Of a DNA stretch of 9,010 nucleotides, positions 1-8,960 are shown piece after piece (position 1 is the stretch's first letter; each line of letters begins with the position of its first letter). The position numbers and the translations under genes are program-made. The stretch is from Octopus sinensis (taxonomy: Eukaryota). The stretch lies in assembly GCF_006345805.1 (NCBI RefSeq), contig NW_021828117.1, forward strand, positions 1-9,010, in the 5' to 3' direction. The notes beneath the pieces are model-generated. The model had not been told where the DNA came from, did not search any database, and was given only the letters and a program-made list of their open reading frames with translations.

Positions 1-118
1 ACGTAAATACAGATAAGCACATATTGCATGTATATAAAATTATCCTATATGACCGTAGCCACATACACACATACACGCATGTATACATACATGCACACAC
101 ATACATACACACACAGAA
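1..118. repeat. Degenerate (CA)/(TA)/(TACA) microsatellite region
   Basis: Mixed ACACAC, TATATA and TACATACA runs are visible directly. Confidence 0.7.
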
Positions 119-154
119 ATAGAAGTTTAAAAAGATTTATTTTAGGTGCAGGAG

Positions 155-165
155 TGGCTGTGTGG
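155..165 (+). promoter_or_regulatory. Pol III A-box-like motif of SINE copy 1
   Basis: TGGCTGTGTGG resembles TRGCNNARYGG and sits 10 nt from the element start. Confidence 0.7.
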
Positions 166-197
166 TAAGTAGCTTGCTTACCAACCATGTGGTTCCG

Positions 198-208
198 GGT
201 TCATTCCC
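198..208 (+). promoter_or_regulatory. Pol III B-box-like motif of SINE copy 1
   Basis: GGTTCATTCCC resembles GGTTCRANNCC, at tRNA-like spacing from the A box. Confidence 0.7.
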
Positions 209-756
209 ACTGCGTGGCACCTTGGGCAAGTGTCTTCTACTATAGCCTCGGGCCGACCAAAGCCTTGTGAGTGGATTTGGTAGACGGAAACTGAAAGAAG
301 CCCGTCGTATATATATATGTATATGCGTGTGCGTGTACCAGAGAAGTATGTGAATGTTTGTATCTGTGATTATTTCGTACCGTATTTACATCTAAAATAC
401 TACAATTAGCCGTCATTTTTGACGGCACGTGGCCAGCTAGTTTATTAACAAGAAGCACTGAAATTAATGCATGCAAGATTTCTCAGCTCTAGCATCACTC
501 TTGCATTGTCAGCCTATGAAATTTTATTCATTTAATTGGCCACAAGGGCCTTACAAAGAAAGGAAGCTGCGGGCTGGACACGGACATAATGAGATGGAAT
601 CATTAACGATATGATAATAATGAGGGCAACAGCAATGCCCGCCGATTGCTGTATACCCAAGCACATTGTTTTTTTATAAAACCTTTTGAGGTAACAAACC
701 TCTAGCCTATGAACTTATCACCCGACTCTCGTATGCCAGTTTCTAGAACTGACACG

Positions 757-767
757 TGTACTCGCAG
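757..767. repeat. Putative target-site duplication, left copy (TGTACTCGCAG)
   Basis: Matches 1843-1853 (TGAACTCGCAG) at 10/11 positions and directly abuts the RTE 3' tail. Confidence 0.7.
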
Positions 768-1425
768 TACTACTTGTACTTGTGACGGCGTTCACCCAGG
801 GCGGGTTGAGCCGGCTTCTTCTCTGGTTCTATAACGGCATCACGAACCAGGGCGGCCCACGCTCGACGGTCCTGTGCGAGGTCACTGGTGATAGCGCGCC
901 ATTCGCGGTTCCATCTGTCCAGACTGACCACCTGCGGACCTGAGAGTTCGGAGTGGTCCTCCTTTATCGTCGTTGCCCAGGTCTTCAGCTGTCCGCCTGT
1001 GCGTTTACGCCAGCTGGGAAGTTGAGGTGGGAGGAGGACATTACGAATCAGCTCACCCTCTGGCCGCATGACCGAACCAGCTTAAGCGCCGTTGTAGAAG
1101 CACCGAAGAGAGGGGCCGGAGATTCCGCCGATGACGAAGACCGGCTGTAGGAACCCGATCAATGCGTCGGCGGCGAAGAAAGCGGCGGTGACAGTCATTG
1201 TCGAACGCCTCCAGCCTTCGCTGATCGACTACCCTCATAGGCCATGATTCTCAACCATGGAGGAGGATAGTACGAACGACGACCTGGTAGATTCGCCCTT
1301 TGGTCACCGAGGAGATCTTTCTTCTGTCCCACAGGCACCGCCGGAGGCGCACGAATGCTGGCAACACCTATGCGACGCTCGACCTCGGCTGCGCCCTGGC
1401 CCTTTGGAACCACCGTTGAACCGTG
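768..1425 (-). mobile_element. 5'-truncated RTE-clade non-LTR retrotransposon (LINE) 3' fragment with (CAAGTA)n tail
   Basis: The minus strand encodes the post-RT C-terminal region typical of RTE LINEs, with motifs GS...RI..A, KGRIY..VVRTILL.G.ESW, RRL.WFGHAAR, GGQLKTW and DLAQDRRAW. It ends in CAAGTACAAGTAGTA (768-782). GC-rich relative to its flanks. Confidence 0.92.
770..1422 (-). pseudogene. Disrupted RTE ORF C-terminus (reverse transcriptase polyprotein remnant)
   Basis: Stitched reading: GSTVVPKGQGAAEVERRIGVA / AFVRLRRCLWDRRKISSVTKGRIYQVVVRTILLHG*ESWPMRVVDQRRLEAFDNDCHRRFLRRRRIDRVPTAGLRHRRNLRPLSSVLLQRRLSWFGHAA / RPEGELIRNVLLPPQLPSWRKRTGGQLKTWATTIKEDHSELSGPQVVSLDRWNREWRAITSDLAQDRRAWAALVRDAV. 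Frameshifts at ~1359 and ~1062, and an in-frame TGA at 1253-1251. A probable third shift near 830 gives EEAGSTRPG* (TGA at 794-792). Confidence 0.88.
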
Positions 1426-1842
1426 TTTCTCTTTCTCTTTCTCTTTCTCTTTTACTTGTTTCAGTCATTTGACTGCGGCCATGCTGGAGCACCGCCTTTA
1501 ATCGAGCAACTCGACCCCGGGACTTATTCTTTGTAAGCCCAGTACTTATTCTATCGGTCTCTTTTTTGCCGAACCGCTAAGTGACGGGGACGTAAACACC
1601 AGCATCGGTTGTCAAGCGATGCTAGGGGACAAACACAAACACACAAACACGCACATATACATATATATATACATATATACGACAGGCTTCTTTCAGTTTC
1701 CGTCTACCAAATCCACTCACAAGGCATTGGTCGGCCCGGGGCTATAGCAGAAGACACTTGCCCAAGATGCCACGCAGTGGGACTGAACCCGGAACCATGT
1801 GGTTGGTTAGCAAGCTACTTACCACACAGCCACTCCTGCGCC
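1426..1842 (-). mobile_element. Full-length tRNA-derived SINE (octopus type): tRNA head, CORE-like body, internal microsatellite, 3' domain, (GAGAAA)4 tail
   Basis: The minus strand starts GGCGCAGGAGTGGCTGTGTGG and the head is ~94% identical to 144-306. Internal (TA)/(TG) tract at ~1628-1680. The 3' end AAAGGCGGTGCTCCAGCATGGCCGCAGTCAAATGACTGAAACAAGTAAAAG matches 4984-5035 at 48/52. Tail (TTTCTC)4 on + at 1426-1449. Confidence 0.93.
1779..1832 (-). promoter_or_regulatory. Pol III internal promoter of SINE copy 2 (A box 1832-1822, B box 1789-1779)
   Basis: TGGCTGTGTGG and GGTTCAGTCCC on the minus strand. Confidence 0.7.
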
Positions 1843-1853
1843 TGAACTCGCAG
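1843..1853. repeat. Putative target-site duplication, right copy (TGAACTCGCAG)
   Basis: Directly abuts the SINE 5' end. 10/11 match to 757-767. Confidence 0.7.
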
Positions 1854-2970: not shown

Positions 2971-3297
2971 CCGATGCTTCTCTTATATGAATCCATAAAG
3001 GTTACGAGGAGATATACCAGAATACTGTCTGTGTGAAAATTATTCTCAGTTAATTGAAAATTCCCTTTTAGTTGGAGAAAGCAAACAAAAACCTAGCGGT
3101 AATTGTTAGTGACGCCAAAAGACAAAGGGAAAAAGGATTTCAACAAATTAGGAAATTAGTAATTTATATGCTTCAAAGAAAACATGATCTGTGCTAGTCA
3201 GAAAGGCGTGTAATAAAAACTGTGTACATTAAAATGATATTTATCTCTCATTGGATGGAATATGTTTTTTTTTATTCTACGTTAACGGAACAGTAAA

Positions 3298-3339
3298 CTA
3301 TATATATATTATATATTATTATATATATATATATATATG

Positions 3340-3371
<32 letters not shown>

Positions 3372-3599
3372 TATTTATACATATATATACATACATATAT
3401 ATACACATATAAAACATACATACATACATCTACATACATACGTACATATTTATATATATATATATATTATATATATATATATATATGTGTATATATATAT
3501 ATGTGTATATATATATATATGTGTATATATATATATGTGTATATATATATTATATCTATATATATATATTATGTATACATATATACATATATACATATT
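3298..3599. repeat. Long compound (TA)n-dominated microsatellite
   Basis: About 300 nt of TA repeats with TACA and GTGT interruptions. Confidence 0.95.
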
Positions 3600-4140
3600 A
3601 AAATGAAAAAATGTATAGTAAATGCACAAACGAAAACAGACACAGCATAGCAAATTACAAAAAAAAAAACATACATTAAATGCGCAGACGAACGGAAACC
3701 AGACAAAGGTCCCTAATTCCTCATCCGTTATCGACCAGACGGTAATTATGCAATTTCGTGCCTTTAACGAAATACGTAAACACACGTGCTTTCAATACAT
3801 ATCTAAGTGTCTGCTGAAAATAAGAGAACAATTGTTGCGTTGATGATGCCTACTAAGGCAGAAACCTGTGCTTGTGTCTTCTTTTCTTTCGACAACAGAC
3901 TGTCTCTTCTTCAATGGCACGTCAGTTTTGCAGAATCCTTCATTCTTGAAAATATCTCCTCTTCTCATTTCGTGTTGGTACCAATCGCTATTACGGGATG
4001 CTCTATCTTCCTTCGAAACGTAGATAATTGCATTAAGACAAAAATTTATATTGAATGTCATTTAAAAAACTTTCTTGGCCTCTCTTGTCCAAATAATTGT
4101 CATTCTCATTAATTTCTCTCAGCTCATTTACAATTCATTT

Positions 4141-4274
4141 ATATAAATATGTATGAGTGTTAGTGTTAGTGTGTGTGTGTGTGTGTGTATATACGTATAA
4201 TATATACATTATAGACAAACATGCATGCATCATATATATATATATATATAATAGATATATATATTATTATATAT

Positions 4275-4307
<33 letters not shown>

Positions 4308-4362
4308 ATGATATATATGTACATAATGTATATGTATCTGTCCATCCGTCCGTCCGTCCGTC
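4141..4362. repeat. Compound microsatellite: (GT)n, degenerate (TA)n, (TCCG)4
   Basis: (GT)n at ~4169-4188, TA-rich to ~4335, (TCCG)4 at 4345-4360. Confidence 0.9.
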
Positions 4363-4740
4363 TAACTGTCGCGTCTTTATTTTAACGCCATCTTAGATTT
4401 AGAGAATACAAAGTTATCAGACATTTTAATTGTCTGAAGACACATGTTTCTGCCATAATACTCGTCATTAGCACAGCTGTTGCCTTACTTTATCTTCACA
4501 CCTTCTGTTTGATAGTCTCGACTTTATTTTAATGGCATGGTTGATTCTGATTTCGAGTTCGTACTATTCTTAATAATCTTATTGCGTTGCTTCCTTTGGA
4601 AACGGAGATAATTGTGTGAAACGAGAATTCATCCTTTATGATATTTCATGAACCTTCATTCATCTTCATTATGTAAAAATATGCCACTGGCAAACCTCAC
4701 TTATTTCTTTTAGATCATTTATTTCACTTTCACTTGCACG

Positions 4741-4980
4741 TATACATACATACATACATACATACATACATACATACATACATACATACGTATACACATA
4801 CATATATACATACATACATACATACATACATACGTATACACACATACATACATGTACACATATAAACATATATATATATAATCTATGTATGTAAGTATAT
4901 ATATGCATGTATGTATATATATATGTATGTATATATATATATATACATATATATGCATGTATGTATATAATAATATATAT
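4741..4980. repeat. (TACA)11 grading into degenerate TACA/TA microsatellite
   Basis: Perfect (TACA)11 at 4743-4786, followed by interrupted units. Confidence 0.95.
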
Positions 4981-4982
4981 TT

Positions 4983-5046
4983 AAAAGGCGGTGCTCCAAC
5001 GTGACCACAGTCAAATGACTGAAACAAGTAAAAGAATAAAAGAATA
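4983..5046 (+). mobile_element. Isolated SINE 3'-end fragment (heavily 5'-truncated copy) with (AAAAGAAT)2 tail
   Basis: 4984-5035 matches the 3' end of the SINE at 1448-1499 (reverse complement) at 48/52, and all four differences are transitions. A possible TSD AATATATAT (4972-4980 / 5043-5051) is weak because of low complexity. Confidence 0.88.
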
Positions 5047-5395
5047 TATATGTACATACACATATATGTTTATGTATTTACACATACATACGTACATACA
5101 TACATACGTACATACATACATACGTACATACATACATACAAACATACACACACAAATTCACACACACACACACACACGCACATATACATACATATATATA
5201 CGTACATGTATATGTTTGCTTCTTTGCATACATATATCTGTGTGTGTGTGTGCATGTGGTTGTTCAGAAACACACACACACACACACACACACACATGCA
5301 CAAACACACACACACACACAACAACACACACGCACACACACACACTAATATAACTACAAAGATGCACATATATCTACAAACAACTCCCACATAAA
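5047..5395. repeat. Compound (TACA)n/(CA)n/(GT)n microsatellite
   Basis: Directly visible. Includes three TACG(TACA)3 units at 5089-5136. Confidence 0.92.
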
Positions 5396-5787: not shown

Positions 5788-5902
5788 CAGATACTAAAAC
5801 ACCAATTAACCCACTGAATTACGTTGAGTTCGTCCACTGCTTTATTCTCAATAAGTAATACTAAATAAATTAGTAAATAAATCTATAGATAATCATATAC
5901 TA

Positions 5903-5956
5903 ACACACAATCACACACACACACACACACATATATATATACATGTACACACAACG

Positions 5957-6029
<73 letters not shown>

Positions 6030-6030
6030 C

Positions 6031-6068
<38 letters not shown>

Positions 6069-6088
6069 AATATATATATATATATATA
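5903..6088. repeat. Compound microsatellite (CA)n-(TATC)18-(TC)n-(TA)n
   Basis: Perfect (TATC)18 at 5957-6028, (TC)n at 6029-6068 with one interruption, (TA)n at ~6070-6088. Confidence 0.95.
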
Positions 6089-6201
6089 ATAATTTACAAG
6101 ATAGGGCAGAAGAAAATTCTAATTTTACCTTTAAAGGCATTTTTTGATATGCTAGCCATTGATAAAAAATTTTTTTCCCGAAAAAATGTTTATCCTATAT
6201 C

Positions 6202-6205
<4 letters not shown>

Positions 6206-6288
<83 letters not shown>

Positions 6289-6302
6289 TATATGCATATA
6301 CT

Positions 6303-6345
<43 letters not shown>

Positions 6346-6354
6346 TATATATAT
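6206..6354. repeat. (TA)n microsatellite
   Basis: About 150 nt of nearly pure TA with few interruptions. Confidence 0.95.
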
Positions 6355-6794: not shown

Positions 6795-7988
6795 GCCAGA
6801 AGTTCCTCGAGACCCTACTTCTTTTGGAAATATTTTTTGTTTTTTAATCAACTGCTGCACCGGAACATTATTGCTCTTTCTCGTTGTTGTTGATTCCATA
6901 TTTATTTTTGCTTTCGAGCTATCTCTTTTACGTTTAAATAAACGACACAGTGTAATATACAAATCCTTATATACGCACAGAAGACACACATGCACAAACT
7001 AAAGACGGAATGAGAAAGAGAAGAAAAAAGATAAATAAATAAAAGACACAAAAACAAATAATGTATTAATAAAAAATCCACATATATGAACACGGAATAC
7101 ACACAATAAACACACTACACACGCTCACCCACACAAATTCATGCGCTGAAAGAGATTCATACAACACAAGGACAAAGTGGAATAAGCAACACAAAAGTAG
7201 ACACATAGGACAGAAAGTCACTGATGAGATCACAGAATGTGTGATGAAAAAACTTGGACAGGCGTAAAAACTAAAAATAATATGAATAAAGTGAAGATAA
7301 CCAGTGCGTGTGTTCAATTGGTTAAAAAAGTGACCTTCCCTAAGTCTACGTAGCATCTATTACTACACAAACTACACCGACAAAGATGTCTAATTGTGGT
7401 GGGAGATCTGATATTTTAACTTTCACCAGACACTGGCGAAGGTATATGGGATGGATCAATAGATCCTATTATGTGCATGGGTGAATAGAGTGTCCTTAAG
7501 CTCAGCCTTCAGTGAGGGATCTTACTTCCAGAGGCCACATTGCCTGGCTCAAATCTGGAAGTCTTTGTCGCTCCGTACTCCTCTTAAACGTTTTCCCATT
7601 GGAATACATGTGGAATTAAAAACCCGCAGGTTTTCGGTTTTAAATGGATACATATCGCTTTATAACAGCTCAGTTAAGAAACTGCAAGCTAAGCTCTCCA
7701 GTTCCTTCTGCTGACGAATTTCTTCAGCATCTTTCTAGTCCCTGCCTTCGTTTTTCCATGGAAACTTGTTGACGGAACCTTGACATTCCAGCAAAGAATC
7801 ATCTCCCACTTTTATCCTGTTCTTGTGGAAACGTTTATATTGCTGTCGTTGATGTGTTGTTATGCTATTCTTGTTGATGTATGTGGTAGTAATGAAGTTT
7901 CTCGAAGCTACATTGGACATGGTGGTGACAATGCTTGTGGGGGCGTCAGAAGTGATAGAAATCGTGGTTGCGAAGGCGGTGTGTTTTT

Positions 7989-8274: not shown

Positions 8275-8386
8275 TCTCTCTCCCTCTCACTCTCTTTCTC
8301 TCTCCCCCCCTCTCTCACACACACAATATATATATACTTACATCTATCTATCTGTCTATCTCTCTCTCTATATATATACATACATA

Positions 8387-8420
<34 letters not shown>

Positions 8421-8557
8421 CACATATATATACTATATATATATATCTACATATATATATTATACAAAACATGTATATATATACATTATACCTATGTATA
8501 TATAATTATATATGTATATATATATATATATATCGATATATATATATATATATAATA

Positions 8558-8593
<36 letters not shown>

Positions 8594-8602
8594 TGTATGT
8601 AT
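8275..8602. repeat. Compound (CT)n-(TA)n-(TATG)9 microsatellite
   Basis: CT-rich to ~8370, TA-rich to ~8563, perfect (TATG)9 at 8564-8599. Confidence 0.93.
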
Positions 8603-8748: not shown

Positions 8749-8891
8749 TTTACATAAAAAAGAACTGCATTTCGAAGTTGCAGGTAACAAAGGAAAATGA
8801 AAAATCAAGCAAAGAAGCGACAGTAAGTGTGGAAAATGGGAAGTCAAAATCACACTGATACGAAAATCATTAAGGCTCCTCTCTCGCAGTA

Positions 8892-8959
<68 letters not shown>
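8892..8959. repeat. (AAT)22 trinucleotide microsatellite
   Basis: Perfect 66-nt run at 8892-8957 plus AA. Confidence 0.97.

Positions 8960-8960
<1 letters not shown>

What the first reader, a model, noticed from the sequence alone, without database searches (positions are those of the whole stretch)
757..1853. SINE-RTE chimeric retrogene: full SINE fused to a LINE 3' end inside one shared target-site duplication
Seen: on the minus strand the order is CTGCGAGTTCA, full-length SINE (1842-1426), CAC, 5'-truncated RTE (1422-783), CAAGTACAAGTAGTA, CTGCGAGTACA. The 11-bp flanks match at 10/11 and sit exactly at the outer ends. I see no duplication around the SINE alone, and no RTE-like reading continues beyond 1853. 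The sense strand has no TTTT run over 768-1842, which is only mild support because this can happen by chance. Known: target-primed reverse transcription makes TSDs, and template switching gives 5' small-RNA/3' LINE chimeras such as mammalian U6-L1. Inference: this 1.07-kb unit inserted as one cDNA. It arose either by an RTE-to-SINE template switch or from a Pol III read-through master locus. The latter would be a composite non-autonomous family (SINE promoter plus LINE recognition tail), comparable to Bov-tA-type elements.
Basis: partly seen in the sequence, partly recalled or inferred. Interest (0 to 1): 0.8.

Follow-up and report, generated by a model that had tools for sequence, protein, structure and literature searches.

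The report
Octopus SINE fused to LINE tail
A complete copy of the very common octopus SINE sits directly against the last 655 bases of an RTE-like LINE, and one 11-base duplication brackets the pair; they most likely inserted together, which is a known kind of retrotransposition by-product and not a new system.

Summary
On the minus strand the order is:
- CTGCGAGTTCA (1853-1843)
- a full-length ~417-bp Octopus SINE (1842-1426)
- a 5'-truncated, decayed RTE-like LINE 3' end (1425/1422-768)
- CTGCGAGTACA (767-757)

Both outer element ends were confirmed from unrelated copies. The 10/11 flank match has p about 8e-6 at fixed offset.

No LINE homology continues beyond the SINE, so this is not a SINE nested in a longer LINE. 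The "CAC" spacer is probably the first LINE codon, which makes the junction direct.

One-step insertion is favoured (about 0.7) but not proven. I rank the routes as follows:
- template switch from LINE RNA to SINE RNA
- Pol III read-through from a source locus where the SINE lies inside a LINE
- sequential insertion at this site

Sequential insertion survives because an octopus-species comparison shows this SINE can insert with no duplication. The "no TSD round the SINE alone" argument is therefore weak. The TTTT-free argument carries almost no weight (p 0.13-0.45).

Copy number and the empty site could not be tested, because no searchable collection holds octopus DNA.

U6/RTE template-switch chimeras are already published, so this is a new member of a known kind and of modest interest.

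The parts
1843..1853 (-). 5' copy of the target-site duplication, CTGCGAGTTCA
   Evidence: It abuts the first base of the SINE and matches 757-767 at 10/11.
1426..1842 (-). Full-length copy (417 bp) of the abundant Octopus SINE
   Evidence: About 25 hits in 44.7 kb of O. bimaculoides and about 20 in 54 kb of O. vulgaris. The best is 91.7% identical over positions 1-408. The 5' end is confirmed by other copies. It is about 6% from a mixed consensus.
1822..1832 (-). A-box-like motif TGGCTGTGTGG (SINE positions 11-21)
   Evidence: Read directly from the sequence. The geometry is tRNA-like, but no tRNA call came from ARAGORN or Rfam.
1779..1789 (-). B-box-like motif GGTTCAGTCCC (SINE positions 54-64)
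   Evidence: Read directly from the sequence. Function is inferred only.
1630..1680 (-). Internal TA/TG microsatellite of the SINE
   Evidence: Its length varies among copies.
1448..1459 (-). Conserved SINE 3' end, ACAAGTAAAAGA
   Evidence: Conserved in L002, L003 and window copies. It shares ACAAGTA with the LINE terminus.
1426..1447 (-). SINE simple-repeat tail, (GAAAGA)3GAAA
   Evidence: Tails of 0-15 nt of AAAGA/ATAAAAGA type follow the same core in other copies.
1423..1425 (-). Junction triplet CAC, probably the first retained LINE codon
   Evidence: It aligns with CTC (Leu of YLGS) in the L001 relative, and CACG matches CTCG at 3 of 4 positions.
768..1422 (-). 5'-truncated, decayed 3' end of an RTE-like LINE (C-terminal about 215 codons of the RT protein)
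   Evidence: 67% aa and 68% nt identity to relatives. Relative to L001 it has a 5-bp deletion near 1357, an 8-bp deletion near 1066, and an in-frame TGA at 1251-1253. Homology is confined to 770-1422.
768..782 (-). LINE terminal repeats CAAGTACAAGTAGTA, containing the ORF stop TAG (770-772)
   Evidence: The same terminus is seen in L001 (…CAAGTACAAGTAAGTA) and L003 (…CAAGTACAAGTAGGTAAG).
757..767 (-). 3' copy of the target-site duplication, CTGCGAGTACA
   Evidence: It starts immediately after the LINE terminus.

Best explanation
The 1,075-bp SINE + LINE-tail unit entered this site in a single target-primed reverse-transcription event, which produced the single 11-bp duplication.

Likeliest route:
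1. The LINE's reverse transcriptase primed on the 3' end of its own RNA at a nick in CTGCGAGT(T/A)CA.
2. It copied about 655 nt.
3. It then switched template to the tail of a SINE RNA. The SINE is its probable non-autonomous partner, since the two share the ACAAGTA...(A/G)GTA terminus.
4. It copied the SINE to its 5' end.
5. The hybrid cDNA was joined to the upstream target.

What is shown: the anatomy, the significance of the TSD, the direct junction, and the absence of LINE sequence beyond the SINE.

What is inferred: the single event (about 0.7) and the template switch as its route (about 0.45).

The copy is now a dead relic. The LINE ORF carries two frameshifts and a stop.
For: - TSD of 10/11 at zero offset from ends that were defined independently: p = 8e-6, or 0.003 with offsets allowed (ends).
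- The SINE is full length from its usual first base and keeps its own tail.
- The junction is direct, and CAC aligns to the LINE codon.
- No LINE homology lies upstream of the SINE, so this is not a nested insertion.
- An 11-bp TSD fits this LINE's machinery. An O. vulgaris-specific 416-bp element carrying the same LINE tail has a 9-10-bp TSD against the O. bimaculoides empty site.
- The SINE and LINE 3' termini resemble each other, so SINE RNA should be present in the LINE RNP.
- The SINE part is about 6% from consensus. The LINE part's few lesions suggest a similarly young age.
- RTE- and L2-clade LINEs are published to form U6 chimeras by template switching (PMC4476161).
- Template switching is the proposed source of SINE module exchange in molluscs (PMC4758252).
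Against: - No empty site and no second copy could be examined.
- This SINE can insert without a TSD, so absence of a SINE-only TSD does not exclude a later independent insertion.
- A Pol III SINE transcript should carry 3' flank beyond its tail. A jump onto the RNA's very end would then have left flank sequence at the junction, and none is seen. This requires either tail-specific re-initiation or a processed RNA.
- Prior rates of chimeras are low in other systems (about 1e-4 to 1e-3 per LINE insertion; from my own knowledge of U6/L1 counts).
Confidence: 0.45

Rival explanations
1. Read-through (3'-transduction) composite. At another locus the SINE had inserted inside a longer LINE copy, which is an ordinary nested insertion. 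Pol III started at the SINE, ran through its terminator-less tail and 655 nt of LINE, and the LINE enzyme initiated at the genuine LINE 3' end of that RNA. The window copy is a daughter. More daughters with the same junction may exist, which would make it a composite non-autonomous family.
For: - It explains the direct tail-to-LINE junction with no coincidence and no special jump.
- The SINE starts exactly at its usual first base.
- The sense strand has no TTTT over 1,075 nt.
- The SINE tail carries no terminator, so its transcripts must run into the flank.
- Several SINE copies may carry 19-44 nt between tail and candidate TSD, but this is inconclusive.
- A different non-autonomous element with this LINE's 57-nt tail exists and was recently mobile in O. 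vulgaris.
Against: - No second copy and no source locus was seen in 108 kb of Octopus DNA. That sample is far too small to count.
- The TTTT-free state is expected by chance at p about 0.45 for the LINE part.
- A Pol III transcript of 1.1 kb is unusually long.
- Complete reverse transcription of 1.07 kb is needed, whereas most copies of these elements are 5'-truncated.
Confidence: 0.25
2. Two events at this site. A 5'-truncated LINE copy inserted first and made the 11-bp TSD. Later a full-length SINE inserted, without a TSD of its own, exactly between the 5' TSD copy and the first LINE base.
For: - A TSD-less insertion of this SINE is documented by species comparison (L002 8199-8452 against the O. 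vulgaris empty site).
- Most SINE copies in L002 show no recognisable TSD.
- SINE density is very high, about one 3' end per 4 kb.
- Apparent head-to-tail SINE pairs in L002 turned out, where testable, to be a later insertion into an older element.
Against: - It needs the insertion bond to coincide with the LINE's 5' edge to within about 1 nt, in the same orientation and with a full-length SINE. From densities in 99 kb this is about 1e-4 per LINE fragment, or a handful of such loci per genome.
- Another lineage-specific SINE insertion does have an 8-bp TSD.
- The SINE and LINE parts look similarly young.
Confidence: 0.25
3. The flank match is chance, or the adjacency is an assembly artefact (a collapsed or mis-joined repeat).
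For: The region is repeat-dense, and short-read octopus assemblies have gaps at SINEs (runs of N in L002).
Against: The match has p = 8e-6 at fixed offset and 0.003 with offsets. A mis-join would not create matching 11-mers at both outer ends.
Confidence: 0.03

Closest known systems
U6/L1, U6/L2 and U6/RTE template-switch chimeras (Buzdin 2002/2003; Doucet et al. 2015, PMC4476161)
   Same: A full-length small Pol III RNA copy lies 5' of a 5'-truncated LINE in the same orientation. The fusion is direct and one TSD surrounds the pair. Chimeras of this kind are published for RTE-clade LINEs.
   Different: The 5' partner here is a SINE, the LINE's own presumed parasite, and not an snRNA. The host is a cephalopod. 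The single-event origin is not verified by an empty site.
MINE (WEIRD/MGL) chimeric retroelements of Magnaporthe (PMC2104539)
   Same: A non-coding RNA is fused to a LINE 3' end by template jumping, and the product became a repeated family.
   Different: No evidence here for more than one copy.
SINEs with a LINE-derived tail (Bov-tA/BovB type; Ohshima & Okada 'common tail'; Malik & Eickbush 1998 on RTE as source of SINEs)
   Same: A Pol III-type head sits upstream of the 3' end that the LINE enzyme recognises. This is the presumed raw material of such families.
   Different: Those families carry tens of nt of LINE tail and exist in many copies. This unit carries 655 nt of decayed ORF and is known from one copy.
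416-bp LINE-tailed element in O. vulgaris (L003 36723-37138, found here)
   Same: It carries the same LINE terminus (57 nt, 90% identical to window 770-821). Its TSD of 9-10 bp is proven by the empty site in O. bimaculoides.
   Different: Its 359-nt head is unrelated to the SINE and has no Rfam match.

Membership tests
Template-switch chimeric retrocopy (U6/LINE type) | The 5' part is a full-length copy of a small Pol III-type RNA, in the same orientation as the 3' part | tested here: met
   SINE positions 1-417 are present, and the start coincides with other copies.
Template-switch chimeric retrocopy (U6/LINE type) | The 3' part is a 5'-truncated LINE that ends at the LINE's canonical 3' terminus | tested here: met
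   The terminus matches L001 and L003 copies. Homology is confined to 770-1422.
Template-switch chimeric retrocopy (U6/LINE type) | Direct junction with no flanking DNA or inner TSD between the parts | tested here: met
   The SINE tail runs straight into CAC-GGT-TCA, which aligns to the LINE codons. No inner repeat of 6 nt or more.
Template-switch chimeric retrocopy (U6/LINE type) | One TSD brackets the whole chimera | tested here: met
   11 bp, 10/11 match, p = 8e-6.
Template-switch chimeric retrocopy (U6/LINE type) | An empty site shows both parts absent together | not testable with these tools
   The orthologous locus was not retrievable. The collections hold no octopus DNA.
Composite non-autonomous family (SINE head + LINE tail) | Many copies with an identical internal junction and different TSDs | not testable with these tools
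   Zero hits for the junction in metagenome and genome contigs, but the SINE core also gives zero hits there, so these scans are uninformative. The junction ORF has no protein hit. There is no copy in L002 or L003.
Composite non-autonomous family (SINE head + LINE tail) | Functional Pol III promoter and no internal terminator | tested here: inconclusive
   A-box-like and B-box-like motifs lie at positions 11 and 54, but there is no tRNA call. The unit has no TTTT, at chance p of 0.13-0.45.
Abundant Octopus ~400-bp SINE | Full-length similarity to many dispersed genomic copies in Octopus | tested here: met
RTE clade of non-LTR retrotransposons | Phylogenetic placement of the RT, or an APE-endonuclease single-ORF architecture | not tested
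   Only the C-terminal region is present. It has no Pfam hit, although some homologues carry PF00078. The label rests on the motif pattern (…RRLRWFGH…GGQLKTW…), the near-absent 3' UTR and the terminal short repeats, from my own knowledge. RTE LINEs are reported active in Octopus (PMC9115989, PMC13282606).

The most novel reading that the evidence does not exclude
The unit is one member, or the founder, of a replicating composite family. In that case an octopus SINE promoter drives a 1.1-kb Pol III transcript that ends in a genuine LINE 3' end, capturing a new SINE-LINE "common tail" family at birth.
Probability: 0.12. Interest if true: 0.55.

Novelty: new member of a known kind. Interest (0 to 1): 0.3.

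Why it matters
If the one-step origin holds, this is a concrete cephalopod example of the event long proposed to create SINEs with LINE tails: a LINE enzyme joining a small Pol III-type RNA to its own 3' end. The case comes from a genome where SINEs make up about 12% of the DNA and RTE LINEs are reported to be active. It adds nothing mechanistically new beyond the published U6/RTE and U6/L1 chimeras. As a single decayed copy it has no evident function for the host.

Tried and rejected
- **Nested insertion in a longer LINE:** rejected. tblastx and tblastn with upstream RT sequence find nothing beyond 1422.
- **LINE inserted into the SINE's tail:** rejected. The LINE's 3' flank is not tail-like, and it matches the SINE's 5' flank instead.
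- **CAC as untemplated filler:** set aside. It aligns to a LINE codon.
- **TTTT-free as evidence for read-through:** quantified and found nearly uninformative.
- **Looking up the window's own ORF in public assemblies:** not on record.
- **Six-frame SINE protein query:** returned only five annotated Octopus proteins, so octopus ORFs are not in the protein library. Two of these could not be located.
- **Junction and SINE-core scans of metagenome, genome and viral contigs:** all zero, so they are uninformative.
- **Junction ORF against 1.84 billion representatives:** zero hits.
- **Rfam and ARAGORN:** no tRNA or SINE family. Only spurious microRNA hits on microsatellites.
- **Pfam on window ORFs:** no exon that could anchor an orthologue search.
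- **TSD calibration on L002 copies by sequence alone:** failed. Only two SINE insertions and one LINE-tailed insertion could be calibrated against empty sites.
- **RTE-2_OV sequence for clade assignment:** not in the paper's supplements.

Full report
**Observation**

Reading the minus strand, the order is:
- CTGCGAGTTCA (1853-1843)
- a 417-bp SINE (1842-1426)
- CAC (1425-1423)
- a LINE open-reading-frame fragment (1422-768), ending ...HKYK-stop inside CAAGTACAAGTAGTA (782-768)
- CTGCGAGTACA (767-757)

The two 11-mers differ at one base and touch the outermost bases of the two elements.

**Identity of the parts**

The SINE is the very abundant Octopus SINE.
- A six-frame translation hit only Octopus bimaculoides gene models that contain exonised copies.
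- A 44.7-kb O. bimaculoides locus (L002) holds about 25 hits. Its 54-kb O. vulgaris orthologue (L003) holds about 20.
- The best hit is 91.7% identical over SINE positions 1-408.

Its structure, from the alignments, is:
- a head with A-box-like and B-box-like motifs at positions 11 and 54
- an internal TA/TG microsatellite
- a conserved 3' end ACAAGTAAAAGA
- a short variable AAAGA-type tail

ARAGORN and Rfam do not call a tRNA, so the tRNA origin remains a by-eye statement.

The LINE fragment is the C-terminal ~215 codons of a non-LTR retrotransposon protein.
- It is 67% identical in protein to ORFs on an ENA assembly contig (L001) and 68% identical in DNA.
- Relative to that copy it has 5-bp and 8-bp deletions (near 1357 and 1066) and an in-frame TGA at 1251-1253.
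- I did not test the clade. "RTE" rests on motif pattern, the near-absent 3' UTR and the terminal short repeats.

**Are the boundaries independent of the repeat?**

Yes, for both ends.
- Other SINE copies begin GG[C/T]GCAGGAGTGGCTG after unrelated sequence.
- The LINE terminus recurs as ...CAAGTACAAGTAAGTA in L001 and ...CAAGTACAAGTAGGTAAG in an O. vulgaris copy, each followed by unrelated flank.

With the ends fixed this way, a 10/11 match has p = 8.1e-6. Allowing offsets, only 0.3% of random flank pairs from L002 score as well. The duplication is real.

**What the junction looks like**

CAC aligns with CTC, the Leu codon of the YLGS motif in the relative, and the following codons (GS T...) continue the alignment. 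The SINE tail therefore most likely runs directly into LINE sequence with no filler.

LINE homology is confined to 770-1422. Neither tblastx against L001 nor tblastn with longer homologues finds RT sequence on the far side of the SINE. The SINE is not nested in a longer LINE at this locus.

**Calibration from a two-species comparison**

Aligning L002 with L003 gave three lineage-specific insertions with empty sites.
- A 416-bp O. vulgaris-specific element (L003 36723-37138) has a last 57 nt that are this LINE's tail. It has a TSD of TTTTGG(A)GGG, 9-10 bp. An 11-bp TSD therefore fits this machinery.
- A truncated SINE in O. vulgaris (L003 about 1574-1645) has an 8-bp TSD, GGATCCTT.
- A truncated SINE in O. 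bimaculoides (L002 8199-8452) inserted into an older SINE-like element with no TSD at all.

The third case matters. It shows that "no duplication around the SINE alone" cannot exclude an independent SINE insertion. It also shows that one apparent head-to-tail pair was in fact sequential.

**Mechanism**

Three routes give the observed structure.

*(a) Template switch.* The LINE enzyme primes on LINE RNA, copies 655 nt, moves to the tail of a SINE RNA and copies it to the end.
- This is the published behaviour of RTE- and L2-clade LINEs with U6 (PMC4476161).
- It is also the proposed source of SINE module exchange in molluscs (PMC4758252).
- The SINE and LINE termini share ACAAGTA...(A/G)GTA. 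The SINE RNA is therefore a likely occupant of the LINE RNP. This step is inference.

*(b) Read-through.* At a source locus the SINE lies inside a longer LINE. Pol III runs through the terminator-less tail and the T4-free LINE segment. The LINE enzyme then initiates at the genuine LINE end.
- This needs no coincidence and explains the direct junction naturally.
- The T4-free state is expected by chance at p about 0.45 for the LINE part, and 0.13 for the whole unit.
- No source or sister copy could be sought.

*(c) Sequential insertion here.* This needs a TSD-less, full-length, same-orientation SINE insertion at one particular bond.
- From SINE densities in 99 kb I estimate this at about 1e-4 per LINE fragment.
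- That implies only a few such loci per genome.

I put one-step insertion, (a) plus (b), at about 0.7. Within that, (a) is at 0.45 and (b) at 0.25. Route (c) is at 0.25, and chance or artefact at 0.03.

The SINE part is about 6% from a mixed consensus, younger than SINEs shared by the two species (10-12%). The LINE part's few lesions suggest a similar age. This is compatible with co-insertion but does not prove it.

**What could not be done**

No tool searches octopus genomes by DNA.
- The window ORF is not on record.
- Metagenome, prokaryote-genome and viral collections contain neither the junction nor the SINE core.
- The junction ORF has no relative among 1.84 billion representatives.

Copy number, a source locus and the orthologous empty site therefore remain open. 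They are the decisive tests.

**Comparison and novelty**

The unit works like a U6/LINE chimera and meets every sequence-level criterion of that class. The one exception is the empty-site proof, which was not testable.

It is not shown to be a Bov-tA-type family, because the defining multi-copy criterion is untested. Chimeras made by RTE-clade enzymes are already described. A SINE as the 5' partner in a cephalopod is a new member of a known kind.

Interest is modest (0.3). It would rise if a genome-wide search showed a replicating composite family (probability about 0.12).

Noticed in passing
window 60-336 (+): This is a second SINE copy with only the 5' half (145-336), ending in its microsatellite. 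The 30-85 nt upstream of its start (60-144) are also conserved upstream of several SINE copies in L002 and L003 (for example L003 5647-5740 and L002 28381-28410). This suggests a subfamily with a 5' leader, or a larger repeat unit. Several other 5'-half-only and 3'-half-only copies hint that the 417-bp SINE is itself modular.
   Followed up: partly
window 4984-5045 (+): An isolated 62-bp SINE 3' end (…ACAAGTAAAAGAATAAAAGA) lies embedded between long CATA/CA/TA microsatellites.
   Followed up: no
L003 36723-37138 (-): An O. vulgaris-specific 416-bp non-autonomous element has an unknown 359-nt head with no Rfam match, plus the 57-nt tail of the same LINE family. The clean empty site in O. bimaculoides (L002 about 29740) shows a 9-10-bp TSD. 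It could be an internally deleted LINE or a separate LINE-tailed SINE.
   Followed up: partly
L002 8199-8452 vs L003 about 7160-7175: An O. bimaculoides-specific insertion of a 5'-truncated SINE into an older SINE-like element has no target-site duplication. The same SINE in L003 (about 1574-1645) has an 8-bp TSD. TSD formation by this system is therefore variable.
   Followed up: yes
window 1448-1459 and 768-782; L002/L003 SINE tails: The SINE 3' end (ACAAGTAAAAGA, often followed by GTA or AGTA) resembles the LINE terminus (ACAAGTACAAGTA(A/G)GTA). This suggests the LINE family mobilises the SINE.
   Followed up: partly
window 3290-3600, 4140-4340, 4740-5340, 5900-6350, 8280-8600, 8890-8960: Dense TA, CA, CATA, CTAT, CT and AAT microsatellites cover roughly a quarter of the window. 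They produce dozens of sub-threshold Rfam microRNA matches (mir-297, mir-3149, mir-466) that are composition artefacts.
   Followed up: yes
P0122-P0124 (O. bimaculoides gene models); L002 10001-34753: Annotated O. bimaculoides proteins (aromatic-L-amino-acid decarboxylase, FAM98A, lysosomal cobalamin transporter) contain short SINE-derived peptide segments. The cobalamin-transporter model is 55 aa longer than its O. vulgaris orthologue. These are probably exonised or mis-annotated SINE fragments.
   Followed up: no
L001 (ENA ERZ21867824 ctg123231l) 10001-10754: The closest LINE relatives in the protein library (67% aa) come from an unnamed ENA assembly. Its 20-kb locus holds no copy of the octopus SINE, so it is presumably another mollusc or cephalopod. 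The organism was not identified.
   Followed up: no
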